This document shows, one piece after another, positions 11,559 through 63,600 of a stretch of 64,000 bases of DNA (its first letter is position 1; each line of letters begins with the position of its first letter). The stretch is from the IMG/VR virus record IMGVR_UViG_3300042482_000702, positions 124,001 through 188,000 of that record. One strand, given 5' to 3'. Under the pieces are notes generated by a model. It did no database searches, was not told where the DNA came from, and was given only the letters and a program-made list of their open reading frames with translations. The position numbers and the translations under genes were made by a program.

Positions 11559-11587
11559 ATATTTTCTTTTAGTGTATTAGATAAATA

Positions 11588-12040
11588 CTATACACTTAGA
11601 CTAACTTCCATGTAGTCGTATGTTAAATTTTCGTCAGAAAAAATGTCAGTCAATGACATAAGTAAATTTTTTAGGTGTGGGCGTACATCCACAGTGTATC
11701 TTACCTTCGGAGGGTATATTTTAGCGTCCACCTGTCTATGACAAATTGTCACATCATTTTGTTTGATAAAAATATTAAAGTACTCCGGACCATCAATAAA
11801 TGATGTTTCTAAAATAGCCGGGTTGTTAATAATTTCGTACATATTGTCCGTCATATACGTCACCGTTTTCAATGATAATTGAGTTTGGATATCATCCTTA
11901 AAGTCACGAATTAATTCGTATAACTCTAACGAATACTTCGCCTTTTCGTTAAATTCTCTAACGTTAAAAAATCTCTGTACAATGATGTTATCATTTACCA
12001 TCATTAAGAATTCTAATTTTACCGATTCTTGGTCTTTCAT
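11588..12040 (-). CDS. Hypothetical protein in the replication operon
   Basis: 150-aa ORF tightly packed between the exonuclease and helicase genes. Confidence 0.75.
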   Translation of the reverse strand: MKDQESVKLEFLMMVNDNIIVQRFFNVREFNEKAKYSLELYELIRDFKDDIQTQLSLKTVTYMTDNMYEIINNPAILETSFIDGPEYFNIFIKQNDVTICHRQVDAKIYPPKVRYTVDVRPHLKNLLMSLTDIFSDENLTYDYMEVSLSV

Positions 12041-12048
12041 AATTTTAA

Positions 12049-13053: not shown

Positions 13054-13074
13054 TGGTTTTGTTTGTATTTGTTA

Positions 13075-47255: not shown

Positions 47256-48359
47256 TTAGGACCTAATTTCTGTGGCAAAACAAATTTCACCTCGTTCTCT
47301 TATCAATCTTTCCATATCGGCAAATGATATATACGCGTGTCCCGATTGACCCCAAGATTGACCCCAACTATTTTTAATTCTAAATAGTCGTGTAACGGTA
47401 TTCACACCATTAATAACATAAGCGTGTCCACCGGCAATACGACCACTAATTTTAATTAAACCATTTCTATTAGGGTAAAACATTCCATTATACCAATTAG
47501 TTCCAACTACAACAGGACCTAAATTTAAAACGGAATTTATTAAAGTTGTTAAATTAAATCCCCAATAATAAGAAGAAACTTTACCAACACTTTGTAAGTA
47601 TTTAACACCTCCTCTAACTGAAGTTCCAGCGTAGTTTTCACCTACCCATTCATCAAGTTTTTGAGCGTTTTCATATATAATTCTAGGTGGTATTATTGGA
47701 GCAATTCCACTTTGAGGTACCGGACCATCTTCTAACCAATGAGCCCAAGCGTACCCAACACATTGGGGTGTATTACCTTGATTACCCCACCATCCATTAT
47801 CATCCCAATATCTGTTGGTAATTCTAACAGGTGCGGCGGTTAAAATATTATTAATTGAATATTTGTGGTCTCTTTCATCAGGAACATATTGTCTACCCAA
47901 TTGATATGTTCTATTAATACTTTCCACCAAAACTGTTGGTTCGTTAACACAACAAGGAAATTCTGAAACATAACAACTATCATAAACCAAATCATCAGCA
48001 ATGAAGGATTCCTGAACATTAATATTAAGTTTTTCTCTAATTGGTAAGATAAGTACACCATCAGAATTTCTTAACATAAACTCACCCTCATATCTACCAA
48101 CACGATTAGTGTCTTTGGATGTGAATTGGTAGTATATGTAATATTCTGGTTCGGCGTTGGGGTCCATTGAGGTTTTCTCAACAAATCCGCCCGGTCTTGA
48201 AGTAATTTTTGGTATTCCCGTTTCTACATCTACCATTGAAAAGAAAATTGACGATAACTCTATGGTTTTCATAAAATTATTGTAATCACTTCTTCCATCT
48301 TTTACGACTTGGAATTTTAAAACAGGTAAAGTCGAGTTTTTCTTAATAAAAAAATCCAT
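47256..48359 (-). CDS. BppU-like N-terminal domain fused to a papain-family (C1) cysteine peptidase
   Basis: N-term FIKKNSTLP...YQFT..DT...G.YEGEF...ILP; C-term NQGNTPQCVGYA, GPVVVG, GGHAY, IKNSWGQSWG. Confidence 0.85.
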   Translation of the reverse strand: MDFFIKKNSTLPVLKFQVVKDGRSDYNNFMKTIELSSIFFSMVDVETGIPKITSRPGGFVEKTSMDPNAEPEYYIYYQFTSKDTNRVGRYEGEFMLRNSDGVLILPIREKLNINVQESFIADDLVYDSCYVSEFPCCVNEPTVLVESINRTYQLGRQYVPDERDHKYSINNILTAAPVRITNRYWDDNGWWGNQGNTPQCVGYAWAHWLEDGPVPQSGIAPIIPPRIIYENAQKLDEWVGENYAGTSVRGGVKYLQSVGKVSSYYWGFNLTTLINSVLNLGPVVVGTNWYNGMFYPNRNGLIKISGRIAGGHAYVINGVNTVTRLFRIKNSWGQSWGQSGHAYISFADMERLIRERGEICFATEIRS

Positions 48360-48405: not shown

Positions 48406-50757
48406 TTAACTCTCTTTTCTTAATGAACCATCATAATGTTCAAAGCGATTGTGTTCTGTTGGTGTTAACAATAATAATCCCGGATTGATTTTCCCTTTGA
48501 CGGTTTCTTGATAACTATAAGACATTAATGTTTGTTCGTAAGGATGAGACCATTTAGTTTCTAAATAACATCTGTAATTACCCTCTCTCGATAAGACAAT
48601 CGGCCAATTTGAAAGATAAACTTCTCCAGTAACATACGGTAATCCTTTGTGAATATGAATTTCGTTAAATTTTGTTTTTGGAGAATTGGGGTCTAAACCT
48701 TGTACGGGTAATTTAGGGTTATTTGGCCAATGTTTTTGTCTGAAATCTTGGGGTACATTATACCAACTCCATTGTACACTATTATCACCAAAAAATTCAC
48801 TAAAATTAAGTTTAAGGAAATCAAAATTTTCTTTAGAAAGTATATCTAACGATTTCTGATATAAGTTATCTACAAATCTTGGGAATCCATTTCTACAAAC
48901 CTCACCTTTTTTAGGGTAAAACGCCATGTCATCCTCAAACCACCAGTAACAATCCAAATCAGTTTCATCGAAATGTTCAGCAACAAATACTCTACCACCA
49001 ACAATACCAATATTATCCTTCTTAATGTGTTCAAAACCATATTGTTCACATAATTCAATATATCTCGGTGTTGTGGTTAAATCAGTTGAATTATCTAATA
49101 AGAATTTCTTTGGTTTCTCAACAAAATCTTTATCATAGTCCAACATAGATTGGATAAGAACCTCTAATTGTTTTGGTGAATTAAATGTGATTACATAAAG
49201 ACCCACTTTTGAAGTGTCCAATTTATTCACAACAACATCTTTAGACACTTCTGATTTAACCTCAACTGTCATATCTTTTAAATCCTCAAAGAATTTACCC
49301 ATTAATCCATTACCCTCAATTTCTGAATAACTAATTAAATTAGGATATTTGTAAGTCATAATCGTAAATAACGACTCTTCAGTTCCCATTAATCCTTGTG
49401 ATAAAGTATCATTCATTAACCCATAATAGATTGAATTAATTTCAGATATTGTATCTTTTTTACCTCCGAAGAAACCTGCTCTGGCAACCATATTAACAGG
49501 TTTGCCAGCTAATTCACATAACTCTTGATACTTAAATCCATGAATTTCACTATTGGCATCATACGGGAAACAAACAAAGTGAAAATTCTTAATTAATTTA
49601 GGTAATTTATCTAAAACTTTGTCGTGGGTAAAATATCCAGGATGAATTGTATTGGTTAATCCGGCATCAATCCAAAACATATATTCTGAATCAAATTTAT
49701 CTAATATTTTCGCATCGTGTAAAAGATAAATTTTAGACATAACCAAAGGGTTGTACATTTCTAATTTAGCTTGAGTTGATTCTGTTAACCAACCAACTTG
49801 ATTATACCAATCAGGGTTAGTTCTTATTTTTTGAATTTTATCGTAAAAATCATTATTTTTAAACCAAGATAAATCTCTACGAACAAATTGAGTGTTTTCA
49901 CTACGTCTGTTGTTTAATACAAATTTTTCTAACTCTTCATCACCAAAAATTATCATATTTACATCAACTTGTAATAGTTGTTGGAATTTATCTAAATAAT
50001 GTTGGAATGAACGAGACCATCCTTCTTGGAGGTCTCCCCTACCTATATCCCATAACCCTGTTACTAATGTTGTTATATTGTTAGACTTAGTTGTCTCAAC
50101 CTTTACAACATCATTCTTAACTATTATTGAATTTTTTTTATATCCACCCACTTGAGTAACAACTTCAATCACATTATTCTCAATACCTCTTAATTCAAAG
50201 AAGTCCTTAATTGCCGCTTCAACACCTGGTAAATCATTTCTTTTGTAATCGTGGAAAAATATATAACCACCATCAACAACTCTATCATAAACCTTAACTA
50301 AACTATCATATATTGAATCATAAAAATCTCCATCAAGAAATGCGAATGAAATTTTTTCAGGTAATCTATCGTTTGGAATATCACAAAACCAACCTTTTGT
50401 TATTATTGGTGGAGGTAAATTATTTTCAATAAAATTACTTGTTAAAACGTCTTCACTGGTTACTAATGTTCTAGGTCTCCAACCCGTATTAATTTCCCAT
50501 TTAGATAAATCCGGCAACCCTTCAAAAGAATCATATACATATAATTTTTTATCAGAATTAGTTTCAATTAGGGTTTTCATTAGGTATTTACTTGATTCAC
50601 CAACGTAACAACCTAGTTCAACAACATCTCCGTCTATATCATTCTCAATTGCATCTAACAAATATTCAACTAATTTTTTTATTTGTTCACCATTAATTAT
50701 TGATGAGTCCACTTGTTTATTGTGGAAATTCATTATTTCATTTAAAAAATTTTTCAT
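48406..50757 (-). CDS. Three-domain enzyme: TylF/MycF-type sugar O-methyltransferase + HtrL/WlaTC-like glycosyltransferase + GT-A (GT2-like) domain
   Basis: GDVVELGC.VG, YDSFEGLP, KGWF, FLDGDFY, GG...HDY; TLVTGLWDIGR...RS...YL, WIDAG, GFFGG, TEES; VITFN, LDNS, NIG, FEDD. Confidence 0.8.
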   Translation of the reverse strand: MKNFLNEIMNFHNKQVDSSIINGEQIKKLVEYLLDAIENDIDGDVVELGCYVGESSKYLMKTLIETNSDKKLYVYDSFEGLPDLSKWEINTGWRPRTLVTSEDVLTSNFIENNLPPPIITKGWFCDIPNDRLPEKISFAFLDGDFYDSIYDSLVKVYDRVVDGGYIFFHDYKRNDLPGVEAAIKDFFELRGIENNVIEVVTQVGGYKKNSIIVKNDVVKVETTKSNNITTLVTGLWDIGRGDLQEGWSRSFQHYLDKFQQLLQVDVNMIIFGDEELEKFVLNNRRSENTQFVRRDLSWFKNNDFYDKIQKIRTNPDWYNQVGWLTESTQAKLEMYNPLVMSKIYLLHDAKILDKFDSEYMFWIDAGLTNTIHPGYFTHDKVLDKLPKLIKNFHFVCFPYDANSEIHGFKYQELCELAGKPVNMVARAGFFGGKKDTISEINSIYYGLMNDTLSQGLMGTEESLFTIMTYKYPNLISYSEIEGNGLMGKFFEDLKDMTVEVKSEVSKDVVVNKLDTSKVGLYVITFNSPKQLEVLIQSMLDYDKDFVEKPKKFLLDNSTDLTTTPRYIELCEQYGFEHIKKDNIGIVGGRVFVAEHFDETDLDCYWWFEDDMAFYPKKGEVCRNGFPRFVDNLYQKSLDILSKENFDFLKLNFSEFFGDNSVQWSWYNVPQDFRQKHWPNNPKLPVQGLDPNSPKTKFNEIHIHKGLPYVTGEVYLSNWPIVLSREGNYRCYLETKWSHPYEQTLMSYSYQETVKGKINPGLLLLTPTEHNRFEHYDGSLRKES

Positions 50758-50763
50758 ATTTTA

Positions 50764-51393
50764 CTATTTTTTTTGTCTACAAGTCCATACAACATTTTCA
50801 AAAATGTCTTTATCGTAATATTCTAAATTATGTTCGACACAAGATAAATTTATATCATTATTTGAAATTTCAAACCAATTCCATAATTTTTTATTAATTT
50901 TTTCTTCAAAAATTTCTTTATTTTCTGAATAATCATGGGCCATAATAAAATCACCAACTTTAATATATTTTGATAAAATATTAAATTCCCTAATTTTATC
51001 ACCACCATCACATAAAACTAAAGTTAACCCATCTTGTTGAATAAAATCAATAACTTCTTGGTCCACATTTTGATAATTTTCATAAAAAACATTTTTAATT
51101 CTTATATCAATACCAGTTTTTATTATATCCTTATACCAACTATGTTCCACAATATCATACGATAAAATATCAATAGGGTGTTTAAGTTCGTTTGATGACC
51201 ATTGTAAAAATTGTGTAAATCCACCAAGAGCGGTACCAATTTCTAAAATTCTTTTTGGTTTTGTTTTATTTAAAAAGTTATAAAATACTTCATAAACTTT
51301 ATCGGTTTGTTGGGAACTTAATCCCATAAATGATGATAACCCATCATTTTGGTCTAAATTAATTCTTCGAGTAATGTTGTCGTTTAAACTCAT
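50764..51393 (-). CDS. Class I SAM-dependent methyltransferase (CmcI/Methyltransf_24-like)
   Basis: RILEIGTALGG, SYDI, LCDGG, GD..MAHDY. Confidence 0.75.
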   Translation of the reverse strand: MSLNDNITRRINLDQNDGLSSFMGLSSQQTDKVYEVFYNFLNKTKPKRILEIGTALGGFTQFLQWSSNELKHPIDILSYDIVEHSWYKDIIKTGIDIRIKNVFYENYQNVDQEVIDFIQQDGLTLVLCDGGDKIREFNILSKYIKVGDFIMAHDYSENKEIFEEKINKKLWNWFEISNNDINLSCVEHNLEYYDKDIFENVVWTCRQKK

Positions 51394-51394
51394 T

Positions 51395-52252
51395 CTATAA
51401 CGTTATAATTTTTTTTAATAGATTATTTTCTTGGAAATATCTTTTTTTAATTTCTCTTAATCCAATTATTTTTTGTTGATATATTTCATCACTATTTTCA
51501 ATTATAGTTTTTAATAATTGTTCTATAGAATCAACATCATTTATATCATCAATTAAAATATAACCATCTTCCGGGTATATTTCTTTAATATTTTTACAAC
51601 CAAAATAAATAGGTATAGTATCGGTTAATATGTTGTCATAAAATTTTTCAGTAATCCAATTTTTTTCATATGAATTTTCAATTGAAATATTAAATTTATA
51701 ATCTACTAATGCGTCTTTACGTTTTGGGCTAATATTGCCATCATAAACATCTATTCCGTTTATTTCTTTAATTCTTTCTAAAATATTAACTCTTTGAGGG
51801 TATAAACAAGTTCCTCCATAATCAGTATTTAATCTTGTGATTGAACTAGATATTATCTTAGTTTTATTAAATGTTGATTTTAATAGATTATCGTAACACC
51901 AAAAATCTAATGTGTCAACCCAAGGGCCTCTACCACCATAAAAAGTATGTGCAATAGATTCTTTAAAATTACCAACATATAATTCTTTTGAAAATCCACA
52001 AATAACAGTATCACTTATAAAATGTTTTTGATGTGTACCAATCCAGGAAGGTTCGTGGGGAAATACAAATGATTTAGAATTTGGTTTAATCTCAACATTA
52101 GTGTAATTAAAAAAAACTATAGTATCGTAAGAGTCGTCATAAACAAACTCTATATTAGTCAAATCAATTTCCGGTGTTTTAAACTGCTTAAGTAATCTTT
52201 CTGTTAAATTTTCCGAAGAATCGTAATTTGCGGATATTTTTATTTTTTTCAT
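51395..52252 (-). CDS. GT10-family (alpha-1,3/4-fucosyltransferase-like) glycosyltransferase
   Basis: K..ALVDYKFNISIENS....WITEKFYD......PIYFG. Start probably ATG 52252, an ATGA overlap with the upstream stop. Confidence 0.85.
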   Translation of the reverse strand: MKKIKISANYDSSENLTERLLKQFKTPEIDLTNIEFVYDDSYDTIVFFNYTNVEIKPNSKSFVFPHEPSWIGTHQKHFISDTVICGFSKELYVGNFKESIAHTFYGGRGPWVDTLDFWCYDNLLKSTFNKTKIISSSITRLNTDYGGTCLYPQRVNILERIKEINGIDVYDGNISPKRKDALVDYKFNISIENSYEKNWITEKFYDNILTDTIPIYFGCKNIKEIYPEDGYILIDDINDVDSIEQLLKTIIENSDEIYQQKIIGLREIKKRYFQENNLLKKIITL

Positions 52253-53031
52253 CGTTTTATATTTTCCCAATTATTATAGTTAAAACTAACTTTAAAAACC
52301 CCAGATTCATTACCAAAACCTAATTCACCAACATTATATCCGCTTATTAATGCTGACACACCAATTTCAAATGCCTCCATATCAAAAGTAATAACGTTAT
52401 TCGGTTGTTGAGTTTCAAATAGAGTACAAAATTTTTCAAATTCATTACACATTATTGGTAATTTTTCATTATTTTTAATTAACAATATGTGTTCACTTGG
52501 TAAAGACGCTTGTCTCCATTCAGGGTTAATACCGTAAAATGTAAATTTATCGTCAAATAATGCTTTATAAGTTCCGTTTTTAATTGTTTCTAAATATTGA
52601 TTTTCAGCCCATTCATAAGTCCTATTTGCCAATAAAACTAACATATCAAAACCATTACTTTCCCACTCATTTATTTTAGAATCAATAACATCTGTATTAA
52701 CTTCACTATTTAATCCCGCATCACAATCTAAATAAAGAACCCAATCATATTTTTGATTGATATCTTTAATTGCTGAAAATTTTAAAAGTTGATTAAACGC
52801 ACCAACGTGAGTTTTATGGTTTTCTAATTTATTTTCAGTAATAATAACACGGTTAGGGTTATTATTATACTCATCGTCAAAATGTGATGGAGCGTTTGTT
52901 GTTACCATAATGTCATATGGTGTTTTTGTTAAAACATCATTAATTAATCTTTTAGCAAAAGTTGTGTAAATTTCCGACCCTTCTCTTTCTGAATTAACAT
53001 ATGATATTGCCGATACTAATATATTTTTCAT
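52249..53031 (-). CDS. Putative GT-A fold glycosyltransferase
   Basis: K......YDWVLYLDCD DxD motif; inside the glycosylation cluster. Confidence 0.65.
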   Translation of the reverse strand: MKNILVSAISYVNSEREGSEIYTTFAKRLINDVLTKTPYDIMVTTNAPSHFDDEYNNNPNRVIITENKLENHKTHVGAFNQLLKFSAIKDINQKYDWVLYLDCDAGLNSEVNTDVIDSKINEWESNGFDMLVLLANRTYEWAENQYLETIKNGTYKALFDDKFTFYGINPEWRQASLPSEHILLIKNNEKLPIMCNEFEKFCTLFETQQPNNVITFDMEAFEIGVSALISGYNVGELGFGNESGVFKVSFNYNNWENIKR

Positions 53032-53041
53032 ATTTAAATTT

Positions 53042-53782
53042 TTAAAACCATCTTGGGTGATAGTAAGTTGTTTTATTACTTGTTATTCTATAGTATTTAT
53101 TGTTTTTTAAAAAAGATGAAACTCTCTTTTCAAATGAGTCCCCAGCATATTGGGGGTATTGAATCTCTGATAGAGTATTTTCTTCATTATAAATTTGAGA
53201 TTTAAAAATATTTGTGGGTATTAAAAAACATTGGTCAGAAAATCCCATCCCATATGACCAATCAGGATGTTTATTTATTAACTCATTACCATTTAATATA
53301 TAATATTTTTCATCATCTTCCGCTGCATTATATTGTAAATTCCAAATAGGGTTAACAACTTTAACCTTATCATTTGTGTTTAATATTTCAATACCATTTG
53401 TTATCCAATCATACCCACTTTTATCTGTTAATGAATCACCGGTTAAATAAACCATATAATCTGATTCACACAAATACACCGATAATAAAGGGGCTATTGA
53501 ATACCAATACCCACCATTAAATGATTCTTTATTAATATTAAAATATTCTAATACTTTATCACTATAATCATCAGTAAAAAAATAGTTGTCGATGACTTTA
53601 TTAACTATTAATTTGGTTAAGGAGTTTTCAACTAACTCTCTATCATTAACATTAGTTATTATTAATGTTTTTTTATGAAAGTCATAATTAAGATTTTCAA
53701 ATTTTCTTAATAACCCACCTTGATTTATTATTGCGTACCAATCTCCTTCATAACATTGAGTGAAGAAACTAACATTATTCAT
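53042..53782 (-). CDS. Putative glycosyltransferase-like protein
   Basis: DYMVYLTGD, WI..GI..L, FSDQCFL, YYH pattern reminiscent of GT-A; cluster context. Confidence 0.5.
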   Translation of the reverse strand: MNNVSFFTQCYEGDWYAIINQGGLLRKFENLNYDFHKKTLIITNVNDRELVENSLTKLIVNKVIDNYFFTDDYSDKVLEYFNINKESFNGGYWYSIAPLLSVYLCESDYMVYLTGDSLTDKSGYDWITNGIEILNTNDKVKVVNPIWNLQYNAAEDDEKYYILNGNELINKHPDWSYGMGFSDQCFLIPTNIFKSQIYNEENTLSEIQYPQYAGDSFEKRVSSFLKNNKYYRITSNKTTYYHPRWF

Positions 53783-53783
53783 A

Positions 53784-54341
53784 TTATTTTACTTTTTTAT
53801 AAGTCCAACAAGTACTTGTTGGGGATATATTCTCAACACCAAAAATATCATTTACCGCGTTTGAAACTGGTATGTGATAATAATCGTGACCAGATATTAA
53901 CCCATTAATTTTAAGTTTTGGTAACCAAGCGTTAATATCTTTTTTAACGCTTTCATAGTCGTGACTAGCATCAATAAAAATAAAATCAAGGGATTCATCC
54001 TCATAATCTAAAGCAGCCTCCCAAGATATTTTTTTAATAACATTAACGTAATCTTTAACAGGTTCAATGTTGTTTAAAAAAGTATCATATAACCCTTCAA
54101 AACTTTCTTTACTTATATCTGTAAACCAATCAAAAAATTGCCAAGTGTCAACACAATCAAATTTTATCTTTTTACCTGAATTAATTATTTCTACCGCCAT
54201 AAAACAAGCACTCATACCTTTCCAAACCCCAACTTCAACAAAATGAAAACCATCTGCTGATGTATCGACCATATTTTTATATATGTCTTGAAAATCAAAC
54301 CAATTTTCTCCACTAATTATTTTATCGTAAAAATGTTCCAT
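53784..54341 (-). CDS. Class I SAM methyltransferase (Methyltransf_24 type)
   Basis: FVEVGVWKG.S, VDTW, DFIFIDASHDYE.VK.DI..W.PKLK..G.ISGHDY. Confidence 0.88.
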   Translation of the reverse strand: MEHFYDKIISGENWFDFQDIYKNMVDTSADGFHFVEVGVWKGMSACFMAVEIINSGKKIKFDCVDTWQFFDWFTDISKESFEGLYDTFLNNIEPVKDYVNVIKKISWEAALDYEDESLDFIFIDASHDYESVKKDINAWLPKLKINGLISGHDYYHIPVSNAVNDIFGVENISPTSTCWTYKKVK

Positions 54342-54344
54342 ATT

Positions 54345-55592
54345 TTATAAATTACCCGTTATTCTTTCACACCAACCTTTTGACGTACTAAACGGCCAAA
54401 CAACCCAGTATTTTGGTTTATGAACTGTCTGAAATTCTCTCCAAACTTTACAATACCCATCAGGGTCTCTCATCATGTTATTAATCTCATTGATGTCAGC
54501 ATCTTTCCTATTTAAAGTTTCATCATTCTCATCGTGGAAAGCCACAACCCAAAATTCGTAATCTTTTTCTGGTACTTGAGTAAATCCAATATCTATACAA
54601 TGTTTAAAGATACTAGCGTAACTTGCCAACCATTCTTCTTCGGTTTCATAAATTGTTGGATTTGGTGCGTAATGTTTGTCTAAAGTATATTGTTGGACAG
54701 CTCTCGTTGAAAATTTAAGACCTGAATAGATTTCATAATCTTTTAATGTTCTTTCAGTCCCAAAACCGTAATAACTAAAATCCATAGTCACTTCTTCACC
54801 ATCCATACCAAATAATTGACGATTCTTTAAATGAGATAATTCGTTTTTCTTACCCCACTCTTTATCATCATCCCATTGTTTTGTTCTACCCTTACGAGTA
54901 TATTCGTGCCAAATAACAGTTTTATGTGGGTGGAATAAATCATATCCGTGGGTAAATGCTCTAACGGCAATAGATATTTCTTCACCGTGAAAATAGAACT
55001 CAGGGTCATGTTGAACCTCAACACTAAATTGTCCTACTGTAAATGCCATGTGGGCGGAGTAAAATCTTGAGGTAACGGGTTCTTTAAGGTTTTCCCACCC
55101 CGGAATTGTTTCAGGTAAGAAAAAGACAGCGCCTTCAGGTATGAATCTATCAAACGCCATTCTCCATGGGTCTCTAACTCTCCCTGCTGGGTCATTGTCG
55201 GGGTCAAATGAAGAAACATACCCCGTTAATAAAGGTTTCTTAAATCCTTTCTTTTGAAGTTGTTTAACCATTTTGATTAAGGTGTCATCCCAATCTTTCT
55301 CAAATCTCATATGAGAATCGATTTGTAGAGTATATTCTTCACCTTTATATAATTGTTGTACTTGGTTTCTTGCCCAACAAACACCTTTGGACTCTGTGTA
55401 TAAAACATCAACAACTCTAAATCTTTTATCTTTTGCGTATTCGGATAAATCATCAAACCCATCTTCCGGGTGATATTGACGACAGATTCCAATTACCAAA
55501 TTTTTAGGTTTTTTTGCATTCTCCAACATTGACTTAATTGTTGGAATAAGTTGGGGGTCCCGATAGGAAGCGATTTGTACAAAAATTTTCAT
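54345..55592 (-). CDS. GT60-family polypeptide N-acetylglucosaminyltransferase (Skp1-HyPro / mucin-type Gnt-like)
   Basis: IFVQIASYRD, GVCWAR, LQIDSHMRF..WD, F.GEE...AVRAFTHGYD, WH.Y.R. Confidence 0.85.
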   Translation of the reverse strand: MKIFVQIASYRDPQLIPTIKSMLENAKKPKNLVIGICRQYHPEDGFDDLSEYAKDKRFRVVDVLYTESKGVCWARNQVQQLYKGEEYTLQIDSHMRFEKDWDDTLIKMVKQLQKKGFKKPLLTGYVSSFDPDNDPAGRVRDPWRMAFDRFIPEGAVFFLPETIPGWENLKEPVTSRFYSAHMAFTVGQFSVEVQHDPEFYFHGEEISIAVRAFTHGYDLFHPHKTVIWHEYTRKGRTKQWDDDKEWGKKNELSHLKNRQLFGMDGEEVTMDFSYYGFGTERTLKDYEIYSGLKFSTRAVQQYTLDKHYAPNPTIYETEEEWLASYASIFKHCIDIGFTQVPEKDYEFWVVAFHDENDETLNRKDADINEINNMMRDPDGYCKVWREFQTVHKPKYWVVWPFSTSKGWCERITGNL

Positions 55593-55659
55593 ATTTATCT
55601 TAATTTATTTAAATAATAATATTTAAACGAAAAAGATAAATATGAAAATAATTAATTTA

Positions 55660-58600
55660 TTAATCTTTTATTAATCTTACCGAGAAACCAGATTTTTTAT
55701 CATAACCTAGGTAGAATCTGTTAACATCATCGTAGTCCCAAGTCAGTTCTCGTGTATAAGCGTTTGTTATACTCCAGTCTGTCGAACTCCACCATCCACA
55801 CCTACCGTTACCACTTGGGAAGAAATTACCATAACTATAGATATAAGATGCTGGAAGAGCTGAAAACCCACTGCTGTTGGTAGCCCCCGCATTAGGTTGC
55901 CTCCAAAGTATACTCGTCGATTTCATCTTGCCTCCTGCTAAACCATCTCCACCTAAATTATTTATTAAAATTGTCCATTCATCATCAGTAGGTATATGAT
56001 AACCAGCTGGGGCTAACCCTTTATAGTCATTCACAGCAAACCAATTATAAAGTTTTCCATAAATAGCGTCATTAGCTGGGTTATCATCAAGGTGACGCCA
56101 GGTCCCTATTTTATTATTACCGTAACTTACCCATTCTGCTTCAGTGGTTGATTGAGGTATTCGTGTTCCATCTCTGTAAGTACTTACATTGAGATTAACG
56201 CTTGACCATTCCTGATTATATATAGGTACACTAGGTATCGTTGGTCTTATTGTGCTAGTTGGTGTTGGGGTGTTAGTTGGTGTTTTAGTTGGCGTTTTAG
56301 TTGGTGTTGGTGTTTTAGTTGGTGTTAAGCTTGGTGATGGAGGTATGGTACCTTTTGTTGGTGTTGGTGTTTGTGTAGGTGTGGGTAACGAAGATAATTC
56401 GTATCTTCCTTTTGTTGCGTCATAGTTTTGTATTACTTCTTGTGAGGAAAGTCCTCTATTATAAATAAGTACTTGAGAAATTTTACCATTAAAAAATCTT
56501 TCTACAGTATTTGGACCCAAAGTCGGATTAGCACCTATTAATAATGGCATAAAATAAGTATATGTGATATTCCCTACCTTAGAAGTGCTCTGTATTAAAT
56601 TTCCATTTCTATAAAAGTTAATAACTCCTCCATTAAAAGTTGTTGTTATATTAACCCACGAAGTTGTATTATATGCCGACATAGTTTCTCCTGCTGTGGG
56701 TGTAAAACTACCATTTATCCAAAAGTGAGTTTCTAATTGACTAGGTGATAGGTAATTGGCAACTATTCCATATCCAGCATTTTCTTTACAAGAAATTATT
56801 GTTTGAGGGTTTAATAATGAGTTAAATTTTAACCAAATAGTAATTGTAAAATTATTTGTAAATCTTAAAGCAGCTGGTACTATACCAAAAGTGACACGAT
56901 TATTAATTCCATTAAATACGATACTACCACCACTTTCAGAATCAAAAGTTTGAGGATTTGCAAATGTTCCATTATATCCATTTCCGGTTAAATCTGTCCA
57001 TGTTGTTCCATTCCCAGGATAGGAGTTTGTATTTCCAGCATCTAAATGAACTAATAATCCCGAAGTAACTATTTCGTATCTTCTTTTTGTTAAGTTATAA
57101 TTTTGTATTACTTCTTGTGAGGAAAGTGCTTTGTTGTATATAAGTACTTGAGAAATTTTACCATTAAAAAATCTTTCTACAGTATTTGGCCCCAAAGTCG
57201 GATTAGCACCTATTAATAATGGCATAAGAATAGAGTACGCAATATTTCCTACCTTAGAAGTACTTTGTATTAAATTTCCATTTCTATAAAAGTTAATAAC
57301 TCCTCCATTAAAAGTTGTTGTTATATTATACCATGATGTTGTATTATAATTTAATATACTTTCTCCAGCTGTAGGTGTAAAACTACCATTTATCCAAAAG
57401 TGAGTTTCTAATTGACTAGGTGATAGGTAATTGGCAACTATTCCATATCCAGCATTTTCTTTACAAGAAATTATTGTTTGAGGGTTTAATAATGAGTTAA
57501 ATTTTAACCAAATAGTAATTGTAAAATTATTTGTAAATCTTAAAGCAGCTGGTACTATACCAAAAGTGACACGATTATTAATTCCATTAAATACGATACT
57601 ACCACCACTTCCAGAATCAAAAGTTTGAGGATTTGCAAATGTTCCGTTATGTCCATTTCCGGTTAAATCTTTCCATATTGTTCCAGTACCTGGATAGGAA
57701 TCTGTATTTCCAGCATCTAAATGAACTACTAACCCCGAAGGAACTATATCATCCACTACACAGCGAACTGATAGACCGTTCATTTTATTAGATGAATAGT
57801 AGTTTGATAAAATTCTATTATTATAAGAGTTAATTGTGAAAGTATCGTTATTACCATCAATTTTTTGGGATGCCCAAAATGATGCGGAATATTTAAAAGA
57901 ATCGGTGTAATTTACGAAACCAAGTGTGTTATTTACACTTCTATTTCCAGCTGGTAAAATAGTTAACCCTGTTGTATTTGTTGGTCTAAATAAATCATTT
58001 TGAATCCAATATAAATCTCCCTCAGCACTCATTTTAACACCTGAAGATTCTCCACCTAATGACGTAATTAAATTATTCCATTCAGTTTCTGTTGGGATAC
58101 GGAATCCGACAGGTGCTAATCCTCTTGGGTCATTTACCGCATATGAATTATAAAGTCTACCATACGGTAATTTATTACCAAATTCATCGTAATTTATTTG
58201 ATTATTTGGGTAACACCAAGCACCTTCAGTTAATGCGAACCACTGTTGATTGGTATAATTACTAGCGTCGATAAGTGGGTTACCGTTTCGATAAGTTGTT
58301 ACATCTAAATTCTTACCAGCCCAACGATTACCAACGGAATATGTACCGTCAGATTGATTAATTTTCCCTAATATAGGTATTATTACTTTATTAGGCGTTT
58401 CAGTTAGAGGTATTACAACTGTTATTGTCACCGCACCTCCAGGCGTTTGAATAGTAAAAAATTCCCCATTGTATCGTCTAACAAAAGGGAGAATCCAATT
58501 TGTTCCGTCCCAAGTGGAGATATCCACATAATTATCTCTAATATAGATGTCGTCATTAGTGTCAACAGCCGCAACAGTACTACCTCTATTTATCATCGGT

Positions 58601-60621
58601 AACGTAAAACTAACGGAATCCAATAACCCTATTTCATCACCTACATCCATATTAGATTGATTCCATGTTCTATGGAATACCACTTGGTCCCCTGGGTTAG
58701 AGTTACGAACAGACCATCGAGATATTTTAATAGACCCCTGTATTGGGTCTGATAATGTCCAAGTACCGGTTCTAACGTTTGTTGTTCCGTCAACAATACG
58801 ACAATCGTAACTAGCAAATGTTAGTGTTGAAGTACTTGAATATGATTTTGGTGGTGTTGATGTAGGTGTTGGGGTGTTTGTTGGTGTTTTAGTTGGTGTT
58901 TTAGTTTGGGTAGGTGTTTGAGTTGGTGTTTTAGTTTGTGTTGGTGTTGGAGTTTGTGTTCTAGTTTGTGTTGGAGTTTGTGTTGGAGTTTGTGTTGGTG
59001 TTTGTGTTTGAGTTGGTGTCGGAGTTTGTGTTTTAGTTGGTGTGTTAGTTGGGGTTTGTGTTCTAGTTGGTGTGTTAGTTGGTGTTTGTGTTCTAGTTTG
59101 TGTTGGAGTTTGTGTTTGTGTTGGTGTTTGTGTTCTAGTTGAAGTGTTAGTTGGTGTTTGTGTTCTAGTTTGTGTTGGAGTTTGGGTAGGTGTTTTAGTT
59201 GGTGTTGGGGAAGCGTTTGGGGTTACTGTGGGTGTTTTAGTTGGGGTGTTAGTTGGTGTTGAACTTGGGGATAATCCAGGTGTTGGAGTTACAGTTGGAG
59301 TTTGGGTAGGAGTTTGGGTAGGGGTTTGGGTAGGTGTTTTAGTTTGTGTTGGTGTTGGAGTTTGTGTTCTAGTTTGTGTTGGTGTTTGAGTTTGTGTTGG
59401 AGTTTGTGTTCTAGTTTGTGTAGGTGTTTGTGTTGGTGTTTTAGTTTGTGTTGGTGTTTGAGTTGGTGTTGGAGTTTGTGTTCTAGTTGGAGTTTGTGTT
59501 CTAGTTGGTGTTGGAGTTTGTGTTCTAGTTGGAGTTTGTGTTCTAGTTGGTGTTGGAGTTTGTGTTCTAGTTGGAGTTTGTGTTCTAGTTGGTGTTGGTG
59601 TTTTAGTTGGCGTTTTAGTTGGTGTTGGTGTTTTAGTTGGTGTTTTAGTTGGGGTAGGTGTAGGTGTTGGTGATTCAATCCAAATAGTTGTGTCGCACTC
59701 AAAAGATACGGGACCTGATGCTAAATATTGTTTTCTAGGTGATGTTCCATTGTCGGCAATATACATTGTAGTGTATAAGCTTAAATCCGGACTCGTATAT
59801 CGACCAGTTATTAGTGTACTAAAAAATAATGTACTACTATATTCAAAAGATGATGTTGATGATATTTTAAAAGTATACACATCAAGAGGGTTTACAAAAA
59901 ACCCGTCCGTTGGATATATCATATCGCTATCGGTTATTAAATCATGACCCCAAATTGGATATTTGTCACCCATTGCCGTACAACACACCCATGTGGTGTC
60001 AGCATACCATCCGCTATCCGCGTCGCCTTTATTAATCGGGTTAGTTCCGAGAAACCAATGTTTATAATTATTTATGGGTACATTGGAAGTATTACCCGAA
60101 TCATTTGTTGATTTAACTGTCGGATACCCATTTGGGTTAATAGATGCTGTTACTACAATTGTTTTAGAAGAGGAAATAATTTCAACACCATTTTTAAACA
60201 AATGTATTTTAAATGTTAATGACTTATTTGACCAAACACTAATATCTAACCCAACTTCTCTAAGACGATAAATATCCAACGGAGCAAATGAAAAACTATC
60301 ATTAACATTGTTAAAACTAAAACCATTATCATTAGATGTATAATTCGGACTTTTATAATAATTTGTAAATGTTAATTGTGATTTACCATCAAGAGTTGTT
60401 TTTTCAACAACAAATCTTGAAACATTGTCGGGGGATTCAACTCTAACCCCATTGTCTAATGATAATTCTGAATATGATAAATTTGTTGCTAATAATGTTG
60501 ATACACCAGTTGGATTGTATTTTTTGGCAATAGATTTTGTATTACCTATATAATAATAAATGGTATAAATACCATCAACTCCTAATTGGCCATTGGTTAA
60601 TTTTATGTCAAAGTGTCTCAT
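55660..60621 (-). CDS. Multidomain fibre/adhesin-like protein: N-domain, Thr/Pro mucin-like stalk, FISUMP domain, 2x LamG/ConA-like, short TP linker, second FISUMP domain
   Basis: FISUMP motifs W...NL.V..YRNG/DG, YG.LYN, LAP.G..IPT..EW, GF/LSVR; LamG modules LVVHLDAG...SYPG.GT.W.DL.GNG...F.GKI.QV.IYN..LS..EV.QNY. Confidence 0.85.
56398..57740. repeat. 675-bp tandem duplication encoding two LamG-like domains
   Basis: TATTACTTCTTGTGAGGAAAG occurs at 56431 and 57106; long stretches are identical between the copies. Confidence 0.92.
58853..59675. repeat. Low-complexity tandem repeat encoding (T-P/T-Q/T-R/T-K)n
   Basis: Units such as GTTGGAGTTTGTGTTCTA recur many times; the protein has Thr at every second residue for about 270 aa. 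Confidence 0.95.
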
Positions 60622-60645
60622 TTTATTTTAATTCTTTTTATTATT

Positions 60646-60672
60646 TTATTATTATTATTATTATTATTATTA
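60646..60672 (-). repeat. (TAA)9 microsatellite forming nine in-frame stop codons
   Basis: tta x9 on the plus strand, starting at the stop codon of the upstream gene. Confidence 0.9.
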
Positions 60673-63600
60673 CCAAATACCACCACTTAAATCATTATAT
60701 GTGTTTGAACTCGCTGATTCATTACCTGATATATCAATAGATTTTACTGACCAACTCATAGGTGCCCCAAAATGGTATCCCCAAGTGTTAATTTGTACTG
60801 TATAAGTATTCCCGAATAGTGTTGGTACAGTTCCACGTGCTGGTACTAAGTGATATACATATGTTTTAAATTCGCCGGGTTCAGTGTAAGATATGATGTA
60901 GTGATGAATCATGTCATTGTCAGTTGAAGCGTTCCAAGAAAAATTAAAATATCTACCAGTTCCGGTTCCAACCTTTGTTCCTGTAAAACTAGTAGGTGCG
61001 GTCGGAAGGACATTAGGGTTTTCATAAAAAGAAGTTTGGATGTCTAAAATTATACCATTGGAACCTATTTTAAATACTAATGGATTAGTTCCTGCTCCAT
61101 ATTGTTGATACCATAGAGAATTTCCATTAAATACTGTAGGACCAGTTTGACCTATATATAATGTCGCCCCTACAACAGCAGTTGAACTGTTGGACCATAA
61201 TGCGGCGAATCTAGAATCGTTGTCGAGTAAGGACGAACCACTGACATTATTGTAACTTTGAAAAATAAAAGATGCGTATTTTGCACTACCCCCACTATTT
61301 GTTGTGTCAATTGAATAAGCATATCTTACGTCAGAGATTAATGGTACTGGTATTTGTTGGACAATGTGGAAAGAATAGTTTTGGTTAGTTAAGTATTGTC
61401 CTGAAGTATTTGTATAACTATGTTGAATGGACATTACAATTCTAGCAGAATAAGTTATTACTTTACTAGGTTCAACACCAAATGTATAAATATCATTAGG
61501 GTCCATATTAACACCGGATAATAGAAACCTAATTGGGGACCAATCATTTGCCACAGTTGATGACGTTACACTATGAAAACGAACATTATTTTTATATATT
61601 ATTAATGTAATTGGGACACCTCCTGTTGCGGATTTTATTTGCAAACCAGCTGTTCTTATACCATAAGTATCTGAACTAAATTCACCATATGGTGAGAATG
61701 AAATAGAATCTTTACTATCATTAAACACAAATCCGTACCTATTTTCAATTGCCGGAGTAAAGTTGTCTGGTTCTAGTCTATATTTAAAGCTTATAATAGT
61801 AGGTGGTGCTGTTAAACATACGGAAGAATTACCAATTGAATATGTGTAATTATTTAATGGACTTTGTGTTATTATTTTGGAAATATACATTTCATTTATA
61901 GTAGTTCCATTAAAAATGGTACCAAAAGGTATTAATGTTTTAAATAATGATGGTGAAGTTGTTGCTGTAAATGTTTTAATGAAATTATTAGTATTTTTAA
62001 CAACGACTTCTAATTTAACAGAATTATATGTTGGTATTGCAGAATTTGTTAATTTATTTACACCAGAAATATAAAATCCTCTTTCAGTTAATGTATCACA
62101 ATTTTCAGAAATATTTAACATTATATCAACCTGTTTTTTATATAAAAATGGGTCATGTCTAATCCAATCAATTAATGGTTGGTAATACCCGTCTGGTGCG
62201 GGAACATAAGTACCACCTGATAATATTAAAAAATCCGTAACACCTGAATAATTGGTTGTTGATGTTTTTTTAATTAAACCCTGATAACATTTTGGGTTAT
62301 TTTCTAATGTTAATGGGTTAAAAACTCTAGAATTATCCATATCTTTACGTAATATATCTAAAGGTATAGGGGAATTAATGTCAAATAAAAACCAATTACT
62401 AATATATGATGGGTAAGGTGATTTAGTTTTAACCTCATTACTTATAGATTTAATTTTTCCGGATTCTATTTGATATGTTTTAATTGGTTGGTTAATCAAT
62501 TTTGATGGGGTTTCTTCATCAAAACCACCGGTCGGAGCTCCCGTATAGTATCCTTTTAAGACTTTTTTACACCCAGAAACATCAAAATAAACAGTTTTAC
62601 CAATAGTTAAACCTAAACTATCTGTATTATTAAAATATAGGGTAGTACTTTCAGATTTAGCAGGAAAAGTAGATGTACCTTCTTCATTCCACGAAAAATT
62701 TGTGTAAATTGACTCTAAAATCCCTATATTTACATCTGGTATAGATACTGAATAATTTCCGACCGTTGTTGCGTATTCGTAAGATGCGTTAAGTAAAAGT
62801 GTTGCCTTATTATCGGCATCTAATTGACTAACGCAACTAAATTCTTGTTTAGCGGGTATACTAATTTTCGTTTGAGTAGGTATTTCTAATTCACAACACT
62901 TATTTGGAACGGCTTTTTCCATTAATGTGCTATAATATATTTGACCTAAACATGTTGGTTCTGGTTTACCGGATGTATATATTAAGATGATTAATCTTAA
63001 AAAATCAGTTATTAATATTGGGTTATCAGGTTGTATCCCTGTTTGTTGGATGTAATTTGAATTTTCAAACGACTCATCAATATAATCGTAAAATACTCCT
63101 GAACATAGTGTTTTAGAGGATATTAAACCATTACTTACTTGGTAGTAATAAATTCCTTCAGAATAAAACCCATTGGGTACTTTTGAGTATTCATTTTTTA
63201 ATAACGATTGGTTTATTTCCATATATGGTGTTGGAACATATCTATGAAGGAACATTTTACAATCTTCAATTAAAGGAGTTACAGTTTTTTTAAAAAAGGC
63301 TTTCAATATCAGGTATACGGCGATTGCCCCAGCAAGAATAGCTAATAGAGGTCCGAGACCTAAACCGAATAAAAGTTTTGCCCCTAAATCTATTGACAAG
63401 GCTTGTCCTGTTATTATTCGGGTGACCCAACCAACACCTTTGTCAAATATCTGAGTTGCAATAAAATTCACCACTTGGGAGTTCTCAAATGCGATAAGTA
63501 GAGCACCTATTAAGGCTACCGTAGCAACATAATTATTTCCGTTTTTCCATGTAAATATCCCTGATAATCCTGCGTTACCCATGATTAACCGCCAATTAGT

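What the first reader, a model, noticed from the sequence alone, without database searches (positions are those of the whole stretch)
48406..60621. Candidate phage-encoded mucin-type O-glycosylation system: GT60 initiator, elongating GTs and O-methyl caps next to a Thr/Pro stalk substrate
Seen: a fibre-like gene with about 270 aa of Thr-X repeats ([15 protein letters not shown], including PTVT) is immediately followed, on the same strand, by a GT60-type enzyme, a methyltransferase, two GT-A-like proteins, a GT10, another methyltransferase and a TylF-HtrL-GT2 fusion, nearly all abutting. Established: eukaryotic GT60 enzymes transfer alpha-GlcNAc to protein, either to Skp1 hydroxyproline or to Thr of mucin-like repeats in Dictyostelium (Gnt2/modB) and Trypanosoma cruzi; GT10 enzymes are fucosyltransferases; TylF enzymes O-methylate sugars. 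Inference: the phage builds a methyl-capped O-glycan on its own mucin-like stalk in the host cytoplasm, giving a stiff, protease-resistant bottle-brush that spaces lectin domains or shields the virion. No nucleotide-sugar synthesis genes are in this window, so donors would come from the host or elsewhere in the genome.
Basis: partly seen in the sequence, partly recalled or inferred. Interest (0 to 1): 0.92.

Follow-up and report, generated by a model that had tools for sequence, protein, structure and literature searches.

The report
Phage mucin-like fibre glycosylation locus
A giant freshwater phage carries a fibre-like gene with a long threonine-proline "mucin-like" stalk, followed directly by sugar-adding and sugar-methylating enzymes led by a relative of the enzymes that start mucin-type glycosylation in protists; the same pairing recurs in hundreds of phages and in some bacteria, so the phage most likely sugar-coats its own fibre.

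Summary
On the minus strand, a 1653-aa fibre-like protein with about 280 aa of Thr-X repeats is followed by eight abutting genes. These are a strong GT60 (PF11397, 8e-70), two methyltransferases, two small unclassified proteins, a GT10, and a TylF-HtrL-GT-A fusion.

In 47 distinct relatives from IMG/VR, GT60 sits directly behind a TP-repeat protein in 36 (41 counting short linkers). The fibre genes themselves are otherwise unrelated. The link recurs in distant phage lineages and in bacterial genomes. It also holds in reverse: 10 of 120 (TP)6 loci carry GT60 or its partner, against 0 of 118 (GS)6 controls.

The modelled GT60 most resembles mucin-type ppGalNAc-transferases. The conserved core is GT60 plus a tandem two-GT-A enzyme. 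Between them lies a hypervariable cassette (61 families). XacN1, an isolate with a GT60 homologue, has Schiff-positive virion proteins.

Best reading (about 0.6): cytoplasmic, phage-encoded mucin-type O-glycosylation of TP linkers in fibre proteins. No biochemistry exists. I rate it a new variant of a known kind (virus-encoded virion glycosylation).

The parts
55660..60621 (-). Fibre-like protein, 1653 aa. Layout: N-terminal domain, long Thr-X/TP stalk, FISUMP domain, two LamG-like domains, short TP linker, second FISUMP domain. This is the proposed glycosylation substrate.
   Evidence: ORF. Pfam Fib_succ_major x2 and Laminin_G_3 x2. TIGR02145. phrog_8510 'virion structural protein' on the LamG region. 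No hydrophobic segment or signal peptide.
58852..59673 (-). Main Thr-X / Thr-Pro repeat block (aa ~316-597). Thr sits at every second position; T is 36-50% and P 20-24% per 50-aa window.
   Evidence: At DNA level it is a degenerate 12/30/42-nt tandem array.
56224..56391 (-). Second, short TP linker (aa ~1411-1466) in front of the C-terminal FISUMP domain.
54345..55592 (-). GT60-family glycosyltransferase, 415 aa. Proposed initiating polypeptide HexNAc-transferase. It has a GT-A catalytic domain plus a conserved ~110-aa C-terminal beta domain.
   Evidence: PF11397, 8e-70. phrog_24687, 9e-168. Model pLDDT 90.3. The top 27 PDB fold matches are all mucin-type ppGalNAc-Ts. BFVD matches are 'Glycosyltransferase, GlcNAc' of uncultured phages, Megaviridae and Pandoravirus.
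55311..55319 (-). Codons for D92-S93-H94, a DxH motif that is invariant in 20 homologues down to 39% identity.
   Evidence: Alignments A2 and A3.
53784..54341 (-). Class I SAM methyltransferase, 185 aa (Methyltransf_24). Part of the variable cassette.
   Evidence: Absent at this position in almost all relatives.
53042..53782 (-). 246-aa protein of an unnamed family. Part of the variable cassette; function unknown.
   Evidence: No Pfam, NCBIfam, PHROG or PDB hit. 69 homologues, several from Bacteroidota, one fused to a Methyltransf_24 domain.
52249..53031 (-). 260-aa protein. Possibly a GT-A-type transferase (invariant DxD at D102/D104). Part of the variable cassette.
   Evidence: Sub-threshold DUF273 hit. 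Family alignment A7. No PDB hit.
51395..52270 (-). GT10-family (fucosyltransferase-type) enzyme, 291 aa. Part of the variable cassette.
   Evidence: PF00852, 60 bits against a cut-off of 23.9. An ENS....W.TEK motif can be read in the translation.
50764..51393 (-). Methyltransferase, 209 aa (FtsJ-like, with weak CmcI/rhamnosyl-O-methyltransferase similarity). Common cassette member.
   Evidence: Homologues in 16 relatives.
50158..50703 (-). TylF-type O-methyltransferase domain (aa 19-200 of the 783-aa fusion). An optional N-terminal add-on.
   Evidence: PF05711, 96 bits. Missing from the ~557-aa forms that are the majority in relatives.
48409..50085 (-). Conserved tandem glycosyltransferase (aa 225-783): HtrL_YibB domain plus a second GT-A domain with invariant N556-S557 and E608-D609-D610. 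This is the second core enzyme of the module.
   Evidence: PF09612, 72 bits. Alignments A4 and A5. Model pLDDT 84.6. Best fold matches are two-GT-A enzymes: LH3, LARGE1, K4CP and PmHS2. Conserved next to GT60 in phages and bacteria.
47256..48359 (-). Papain-like (C1) peptidase-domain protein, 367 aa, directly downstream. In most relatives the homologous protein carries a TP linker, so it is a second candidate substrate class.
   Evidence: PF00112. phrog_16701. TP content of homologues.
60670..63939 (-). Upstream large protein. It is cut by the window end (1329 aa in the full contig). It has hydrophobic helices near aa 110-215 and a domain weakly similar to the fibre N-terminus. Context only.

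Best explanation
This is a phage-encoded, cytoplasmic, mucin-type protein O-glycosylation module.

**Steps that are inferred.**
1. The fibre-like protein is made in the host cytoplasm. Its Thr-X/Thr-Pro stalk is the acceptor.
2. The GT60 enzyme is a soluble retaining GT-A with a DxH metal site. It transfers a HexNAc, most likely GlcNAc from the host's UDP-GlcNAc pool, onto Thr hydroxyls of the repeats.
3. The conserved tandem HtrL/GT-A enzyme adds the next sugar or sugars. In this phage its fused TylF domain O-methylates one.
4. The swappable cassette decorates and caps the chains. Here it holds a GT10 fucosyltransferase-type enzyme, two methyltransferases and two unclassified proteins. The result is a strain-specific glycan.
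5. The outcome is a densely glycosylated, extended linker that carries the LamG and FISUMP lectin-like domains on the virion.

**What is shown.** The gene content, the families and folds, the soluble nature of the enzymes, and the comparative association.

**What is not shown.** The acceptor, the donor, the linkage, the order of steps and the physical role.
For: **1. The initiator family is right.**
- PF11397 at 8e-70.
- DxH invariant in 20 homologues.
- The AlphaFold model (pLDDT 90) hits only mucin-type ppGalNAc-Ts in its top 27 PDB matches.
- Characterised GT60 enzymes are polypeptide alpha-GlcNAc-transferases for mucin-like Ser/Thr domains, or for Skp1 hydroxyproline (PMC8724618; PMC6939170).

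**2. Association in close relatives.**
- Among 80 IMG/VR relatives (77-100% GT60 identity), the ORF directly upstream is TP-rich in 64. Positions +1 and +2 score 0 of 80.
- After de-replication to 47 architectures: 36 of 47, rising to 41 with short TP linkers and 42 within three upstream ORFs. A TP-rich ORF also lies downstream in 36 of 47.
- For most of these relatives BLAST finds no match to the window's fibre, or only a short partial one. The link is therefore to the repeat, not to one gene.

**3. Independent lineages.**
- A 38%-identity lineage has a TP121 ORF directly upstream.
- Further lineages at 29-72% identity have TP-rich ORFs within 0-4 genes in nine of ten loci (about 12 kb away in the tenth).
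- In XacN1-like phages, TP-rich ORFs are seen in five of the 13 distinct gene arrangements fetched, 2-8 kb away.

**4. Bacteria.** TP-rich ORFs make up 19 of 351 ORFs within 3 genes of GT60, against 2 of 336 farther away (Fisher p = 2e-4).

**5. Reverse test.** 10 of 120 viral loci picked only for a (TP)6 pattern hold GT60 or its partner, against 0 of 118 (GS)6 loci (p = 0.0016).

**6. Enzyme location.** All enzymes are soluble. No lipid-carrier machinery appears in the cluster or in 36 cassette family representatives.

**7. Core architecture.** An initiator plus a bifunctional tandem GT parallels Gnt1 + PgtA of the cytoplasmic Skp1 pathway.

**8. Isolate evidence.** XacN1 virions contain Schiff-stained glycoproteins, and its ORF334 is the GT60 homologue at 47% identity.
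Against: - There is no biochemical or proteomic evidence for this phage or its close relatives.
- Adjacency could simply reflect a shared hypervariable 'host-interaction' region.
- At least 90% of (TP)6-containing viral loci show no GT60 in the fragment held. TP linkers therefore do not need GT60.
- A few relatives have no TP-rich neighbour: L077/L078 have a Gly-rich protein and L060 a collagen-like G-T-S repeat.
- In XacN1-like phages the TP linkers are short and not adjacent to GT60. The glycoprotein bands of XacN1 were not identified.
- GT10, HtrL, TylF and FkbM-type genes are also typical of LPS and O-antigen loci.
- Only about 20% of the 322-kb genome is in the window.
Confidence: 0.6

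Rival explanations
1. The cluster builds or alters a host-cell surface polysaccharide (LPS, capsule) or a free glycan during infection. It sits beside the fibre genes only because both lie in the phage's variable host-interaction region.
For: - Cassette families are typical of O-antigen and LPS loci: GT10, GT11, GT25, GT2, FkbM, HtrL, carbamoyltransferase, NDP-sugar enzymes.
- Jumbo-phage GT clusters have been read as capsule or O-antigen modification systems (PMC7824862).
- HtrL/YibB is named from the E. coli LPS core region.
Against: - The cluster has no membrane protein, phosphoglycosyl-transferase, flippase or polymerase, and neither do the 36 cassette representatives.
- The one invariant first gene is a polypeptide-HexNAc-transferase relative.
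- This rival does not explain the two-way statistical link to TP repeats across unrelated fibre genes, distant phages and bacteria.
Confidence: 0.15
2. The enzymes glycosylate other virion proteins (capsid, sheath, other fibres). The Thr-Pro stalk is an ordinary unglycosylated flexible linker.
For: - In mycobacteriophages the glycosylated proteins are the capsid and tail-tube subunits (cited in PMC12619734).
- XacN1 shows only 'at least two' glycoprotein bands of unknown identity, and has only short TP linkers.
- PT linkers are common without GT60.
Against: - GT60 family acceptors are Ser/Thr-rich mucin-like repeats or Hyp.
- The positional link is specifically to TP-rich ORFs.
- The link also holds in bacteria, where no capsid exists.
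Confidence: 0.12
3. Skp1-type chemistry: GT60 modifies hydroxyproline in the Pro-rich repeats rather than threonine.
For: - One branch of GT60 (Gnt1) is specific for hydroxyproline and is cytoplasmic. It is followed by a bifunctional di-glycosyltransferase, the same two-enzyme logic as here.
- Pro makes up 20-24% of the stalk.
Against: - No 2OG-Fe(II) or prolyl-4-hydroxylase domain occurs in the window or among the 36 cassette family representatives.
- Thr, not Pro, is the invariant repeat position. Many repeat units are TQ, TR or TK, without Pro.
Confidence: 0.05
4. DNA hypermodification: the glycosyltransferases and methyltransferases decorate hydroxymethylated bases of phage DNA to evade restriction.
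For: - Phage GT clusters often do this (reviewed in texts cited).
- The cluster lies next to PolB and other replication genes.
Against: - No thymidylate-synthase-like hydroxymethylase is found in the 64-kb window.
- I found no report of PF11397 as a DNA glycosyltransferase.
- Sugar O-methyltransferases, a GT10 and 61 interchangeable cassette families are unlike known DNA-sugar systems.
- This rival gives no reason for the TP-repeat link.
Confidence: 0.05

Closest known systems
Protist mucin-type O-GlcNAc initiation by GT60 polypeptide alpha-GlcNAc-transferases (Dictyostelium, Trypanosoma cruzi)
   Same: Same Pfam/CAZy family (PF11397) and the same kind of acceptor, Thr/Pro-rich tandem repeats.
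   Different: - The protist enzymes are Golgi membrane proteins. This one is a soluble protein made in a bacterial cytoplasm.
- It has an extra ~110-aa C-terminal beta domain.
- Activity, donor and acceptor are untested.
Cytoplasmic Skp1 hydroxyproline glycosylation (Gnt1 GT60, then the bifunctional PgtA)
   Same: It is cytoplasmic. A GT60 initiator is followed by a two-domain bifunctional glycosyltransferase.
   Different: - No prolyl hydroxylase and no Skp1-like target is present.
- The repeat-invariant residue is Thr.
- The tandem enzyme here is HtrL + GT-A. It has not been shown to be GT2 + GT74.
Metazoan and apicomplexan GT27 ppGalNAc-transferases
   Same: These are the closest solved folds: the top 27 Foldseek hits, E about 3e-10. 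They share a DxH motif. That GalNAc-T2 also reads D-S-H is from memory.
   Different: Only 11-18% identity. No ricin-type lectin domain was recognised. The family is different (GT60, not GT27).
Mycobacteriophage virion O-glycosylation (Freeman et al. 2023; known here only through citing papers)
   Same: Phage-encoded glycosyltransferases modify the phage's own structural proteins inside the host.
   Different: The targets there are the C-termini of capsid and tail-tube subunits, with actinobacterial hosts. I could not read the paper, so its GT families are unchecked.
Xanthomonas jumbo phage XacN1 (ORF334 and neighbours)
   Same: - It has a GT60 homologue (47% identity) and an HtrL/GT-A homologue (42%), with a cassette between them.
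- Its virions hold Schiff-positive glycoproteins.
   Different: - The module lies beside PolB and RNaseH, and 4 genes from a 3313-aa baseplate-adjacent protein with only short TP linkers.
- The authors did not link ORF334 to GT60 or to any substrate.
Giant-virus self-glycosylation (chlorovirus PBCV-1 capsid, mimivirus fibrils)
   Same: Virus-encoded, ER/Golgi-independent glycosylation of surface structures, including multi-domain GT-plus-methyltransferase enzymes. PBCV-1 is cited; the details are from memory.
   Different: The hosts are eukaryotic, the GT families differ, and PBCV-1 uses N-linked chemistry.

Membership tests
CAZy GT60 / Pfam PF11397 | Sequence match to the family model above its curated threshold | tested here: met
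   236.4 bits against a cut-off of 21, E = 8e-70.
CAZy GT60 / Pfam PF11397 | GT-A fold with a DxH metal-binding motif, related to the ppGalNAc-T catalytic domain | tested here: met
   D92-S93-H94 is invariant in 20 sequences. Model pLDDT is 90.3. The top 27 PDB matches are ppGalNAc-Ts.
CAZy GT60 / Pfam PF11397 | Transfers alpha-GlcNAc from UDP-GlcNAc to a polypeptide Thr/Ser or Hyp | not testable with these tools
   Needs an enzyme assay or glycoproteomics.
Mucin-type O-glycosylation system | Acceptor protein with dense Ser/Thr/Pro tandem repeats | tested here: met
   About 280 aa with Thr at every second position, plus a 55-aa second linker.
Mucin-type O-glycosylation system | Initiating enzyme and acceptor functionally coupled | tested here: inconclusive
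   There is a strong, two-way genomic association. Association is not proof of modification.
Skp1-type hydroxyproline glycosylation | Partner prolyl 4-hydroxylase (2OG-Fe(II) oxygenase) | tested here: not met
   None is found in the window or in the 36 cassette family representatives. The rest of the genome was not seen.
CAZy GT10 (alpha-1,3/4-fucosyltransferase type) | PF00852 C-terminal domain above threshold, with the ENS...TEK motif | tested here: met
   60.1 bits against a cut-off of 23.9. The motif can be read in the translation; what it means is recalled from memory.
TylF sugar O-methyltransferase | PF05711 match above threshold | tested here: met
   95.9 bits against a cut-off of 23. 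The substrate is untested.
HtrL/YibB | Membership of the YibB equivalog (TIGR02192 / PRK11346) | tested here: not met
   74 bits against a cut-off of 264.9, and 49 against 342. The Pfam domain PF09612 is met (72 against 24.1). So it is a domain relative, not a YibB orthologue.
Lipid-linked polysaccharide (O-antigen/capsule) pathway | Membrane initiating transferase, flippase or ABC exporter, polymerase | tested here: not met
   No enzyme has a hydrophobic segment. No such family appears among the cluster genes or the cassette representatives.
Phage DNA base glycosylation | Hydroxymethylase that makes the base acceptor | tested here: inconclusive
   None is found in the 64-kb window, but about 80% of the genome is outside it.

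The most novel reading that the evidence does not exclude
GT60 plus the tandem HtrL/GT-A enzyme may be a general prokaryotic cytoplasmic mucin-type O-glycosylation system for Thr-Pro linkers.
- It would serve phage fibres, type VI secretion spikes (VgrG proteins with (TP)n tails) and Tat-exported TP-rich proteins.
- In phages, the exchangeable cassette would give virions glycan 'serotypes' under diversifying selection. Candidate roles are protection, spacing of lectin domains, or bait for host glycan receptors.
Probability: 0.35. Interest if true: 0.9.

Novelty: new variant of a known kind. Interest (0 to 1): 0.78.

Why it matters
- **Novelty of the chemistry.** If true, mucin-type O-glycosylation would operate in the bacterial cytoplasm under phage control. 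It is usually treated as a eukaryotic secretory-pathway process started by GT27 or GT60 enzymes.
- **Abundance.** At least 7,493 clusters at 90% identity match the GT60, and 432 IMG/VR contigs carry close relatives.
- **Explanatory reach.** It would explain why Thr-Pro linkers and glycan gene cassettes travel together in jumbo phages. It would add a variable glycan coat to the factors that shape phage-host recognition and virion stability. It would assign a function to the large prokaryotic branch of PF11397, for which I found no literature.
- **Testability.** It can be tested directly, because a cultured relative (XacN1) already shows virion glycoproteins.

Tried and rejected
- **Megablast of 12 kb of the window against GenBank phages:** no match. 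The lineage is known only from metagenomes.
- **Sequence search of PDB** with GT60, the tandem GT profile, the 246-aa and the 260-aa proteins and their profiles: nothing meaningful.
- **Profile-profile comparison** of the 246-aa family with the tandem GT: no relation. Its function stays open.
- **First structure job:** I repeated it without that row.
- **My first assumption, that TylF + HtrL is the conserved partner:** wrong. The conserved part starts at the HtrL domain.
- **Promoter and terminator scan:** uninformative. Counts were at or below the shuffle expectation.
- **tRNA scan:** none found, so it gives no host clue.
- **Literature searches** ('bacteriophage' + 'GT60'; 'PF11397'; HtrL/GT74; phage + O-glycosylation + threonine-rich): no prior description of this module.
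- **Freeman et al. 2023:** not in the library.
- **DNA-modification and Hyp-glycosylation readings:** considered and down-weighted, because the needed partner enzymes are absent from the window and the cassettes.

Full report
**What the window is.**
The 64-kb window is about 31% G+C and belongs to a jumbo myovirus.
- It encodes a tail sheath, baseplate wedge and gp25-like proteins, a T4-type baseplate protein, both RNR subunits, DnaB- and SNF2-type helicases, gp32-like and UvsX-like proteins, a 5'-3' exonuclease and a family B DNA polymerase.
- All eleven proteins of the region are 100% identical to those of IMGVR_UViG_3300042482_000702, a 322-kb contig.
- No GenBank phage matches at the DNA level.
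- Three hints point to a Bacteroidota host. GT60 copies at 66-84% identity, and the 41%-identical homologues of the 246-aa protein, sit in Bacteroidota MAGs or genomes. The fibre carries FISUMP domains. This is inference only.

**The observation.**
All genes of the finding lie on the minus strand, exactly as described.
- The 1653-aa fibre-like protein has an N-terminal domain, then about 280 residues with Thr at every second position (TP, TQ, TK, TR and TN units, including PTVT).
- After the stalk come a FISUMP domain, two LamG-like domains, a second 55-residue TP linker and a second FISUMP domain.
- Its LamG region matches a PHROG annotated as a virion structural protein.
- It is the only TP-repeat stretch in any frame of the window.
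- Eight genes follow, separated by 67 nt or less, with no terminator-like site on that strand: GT60 (PF11397, 8e-70), a Methyltransf_24 enzyme, a 246-aa protein, a 260-aa protein, a GT10, an FtsJ/CmcI-like methyltransferase, a 783-aa fusion, and then a papain-like peptidase-domain protein.
- The 246-aa protein belongs to no described family.
- The 260-aa protein has only a sub-threshold DUF273 hit and an invariant DxD.
- None of the enzymes has a hydrophobic segment, so all should be soluble in the host cytoplasm.

**The two core enzymes.**
- *GT60.* An alignment of 20 GT60 homologues down to 39% identity keeps D92-S93-H94 invariant, along with several His/Trp positions. It also shows a conserved extra C-terminal domain of about 110 residues.
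- The AlphaFold model (pLDDT 90.3) finds only mucin-type polypeptide GalNAc-transferases among its top 27 solved structures. Among viral models it finds 'Glycosyltransferase, GlcNAc' proteins of uncultured phages, Megaviridae and Pandoravirus.
- Characterised GT60 enzymes are polypeptide alpha-GlcNAc-transferases. They start mucin-type glycans in protists or modify Skp1 hydroxyproline.
- *The 783-aa protein.* It has three parts. The TylF methyltransferase domain is an N-terminal add-on found only in some relatives. The part conserved everywhere is HtrL plus a second domain with NS and EDD motifs.
- Its model (pLDDT 84.6) best matches enzymes with two GT-A domains in tandem: LH3, LARGE1, the K4CP chondroitin polymerase and heparosan synthase.
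- The core is therefore an initiator plus a bifunctional transferase. This is the same logic as Gnt1 + PgtA on Skp1.

- GT60 relatives are very common: 432 IMG/VR contigs, and at least 7,493 protein clusters at 90% identity.
- In the 80 closest loci the layout is always the same. One or more TP-repeat proteins come first (up to 3315 aa, with about 1,700 TP residues). Then come GT60, a cassette of 1 to about 10 small genes, the tandem GT, a peptidase-domain protein that usually has a TP linker, and PolB.
- The ORF directly upstream of GT60 is TP-rich in 64 of 80 loci. The two ORFs after GT60 never are.
- After de-replication to 47 architectures the figures are 36 of 47 (41 with short linkers, 42 within three ORFs), and 36 of 47 downstream.
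- BLAST detects either no similarity or only a short partial match between these upstream proteins and the window's fibre. What is conserved is the repeat, not the gene.
- Most apparent exceptions still hold short TP linkers. One has collagen-like G-T-S repeats and one a Gly-rich protein.
- The cassette is extremely variable. Its 304 genes fall into 61 families, including FkbM methyltransferases, GT2, GT7, GT10, GT11, GT25, GT61, a PLOD-type GT, carbamoyltransferase, UDP-GlcNAc 2-epimerase, nucleotidyltransferases and epimerases.

**Independent lineages, bacteria and the reverse test.**
- XacN1-like jumbo phages (about 45% identity) keep GT60, cassette and tandem GT together beside PolB. Five of the 13 distinct gene arrangements fetched show a TP-rich ORF 2-8 kb away.
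- XacN1's 3313-aa protein, which follows the baseplate genes, has short TP linkers near its end.
- A 38%-identity lineage has a TP-rich ORF directly upstream.
- In bacterial genomes, TP-rich ORFs make up 19 of 351 ORFs within three genes of GT60, against 2 of 336 farther out (p = 2e-4).
- Bacterial examples include Tat-signal TP-rich proteins in Jiulongibacter and Arcticibacterium. These sit next to GT60, a carbamoyltransferase and a TylF-HtrL-GT enzyme.
- Another example is a Ralstonia type VI secretion cluster whose VgrG ends in about 150 residues of (TP)n.
- In the reverse direction, 10 of 120 viral loci chosen only for a (TP)6 DNA pattern contain GT60 or its partner, against 0 of 118 loci chosen for (GS)6 (p = 0.0016). 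In nine of those ten positives the TP-rich ORF is 0-4 genes from GT60 or its partner; in L204 it is about 12 kb away.
- Most TP-repeat loci nevertheless lack GT60 in the fragment held. TP linkers do not depend on it.

**Experimental hint.**
The XacN1 paper reports Schiff-stained glycoprotein bands in purified virions. It suggested that the phage's two annotated glycosyltransferases, ORF328 and ORF334, make them. ORF334 is the GT60 homologue. The bands were not identified.

**Interpretation.**
- The best-supported reading is a cytoplasmic, phage-encoded mucin-type O-glycosylation of Thr-Pro linkers in fibre-like proteins.
- In this reading GT60 initiates, the tandem GT extends, and a swappable cassette provides fucosyl-type additions and O-methyl caps.
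- The families, folds, solubility and genomic coupling are shown. The acceptor, donor, linkage, order of action and physical role are inferred.
- I put this at about 0.6.
- The rivals are host surface-glycan modification, glycosylation of other virion proteins, hydroxyproline chemistry and DNA modification. Each lacks either its required partner enzymes or an explanation for the TP association. None is excluded by experiment.

**Novelty.**
- Virus-encoded glycosylation of a virus's own structural proteins is known from mycobacteriophages, chloroviruses and mimiviruses. GT60 is a known eukaryotic family.
- I found no paper that connects prokaryotic or phage PF11397 enzymes with TP-repeat proteins, or that describes this module.
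- I therefore rate it a new variant of a known kind, of high interest. It is abundant, unexpected for bacterial cytoplasm, and directly testable in a cultured relative.

Noticed in passing
L166 (Ralstonia sp. 25C chromosome 1) 10267-13131; similar layouts in L177, L164, L134: A bacterial GT60 homologue lies inside a type VI secretion cluster (TssF and ImpA/TssA nearby). It is close to a VgrG spike protein whose C-terminus is about 150 residues of pure (TP)n.
   Followed up: partly
L119 6944-7729 (Jiulongibacter sediminis); L149 6645-7625; L158 9563-10243: Small proteins sit directly beside bacterial GT60 genes. Each has a twin-arginine-like signal, a long TP/SP-rich region and a short C-terminal domain. 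This suggests glycosylation in the cytoplasm before Tat export.
   Followed up: partly
window 41304-42842 (+): A 512-aa phage protein has a complete Fe/Mn superoxide dismutase domain (aa 36-226) followed by about 290 residues with no family match.
   Followed up: no
window 60670-63939 (-): The protein upstream of the fibre is cut by the window end (1329 aa in L005). It has strongly hydrophobic helices around aa 110-215. It shares a weakly similar domain (E = 2e-4) with the fibre's N-terminal region.
   Followed up: partly
window 60623-60672: A (TTA)17 microsatellite fills the short spacer between the upstream protein and the fibre start codon.
   Followed up: no
window 47256-48359 (-); homologues in L002-L081: A papain-like peptidase domain recurs in this region of relatives. 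It appears either as a small protein behind a TP linker or inside ~946-aa proteins upstream of the TP-repeat genes.
   Followed up: partly
L093 9995-11716: One GT60 homologue (574 aa) carries the ~110-aa C-terminal beta domain twice. This suggests the domain is an independent module, possibly for substrate targeting.
   Followed up: no
L060 2-2407; L077 9059-9940: In two relatives the gene before GT60 is not TP-rich. One is a collagen-like (G-T/S-S)n protein and the other a Gly-rich protein.
   Followed up: partly
window 16069-22389 and 22708-27702 (-): Two very large ORFs (2106 and 1664 aa) lie between the replication and tail genes. Neither has any Pfam match.
   Followed up: no
L100-L108 (Saprospiraceae and other Bacteroidota MAG contigs, G+C 0.31-0.39 except L102 at 0.50): GT60 copies at 66-84% identity sit on short low-G+C contigs binned into bacterial MAGs. 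These are probably phage contigs mis-binned with their host, which would point to Saprospiraceae-like hosts.
   Followed up: no
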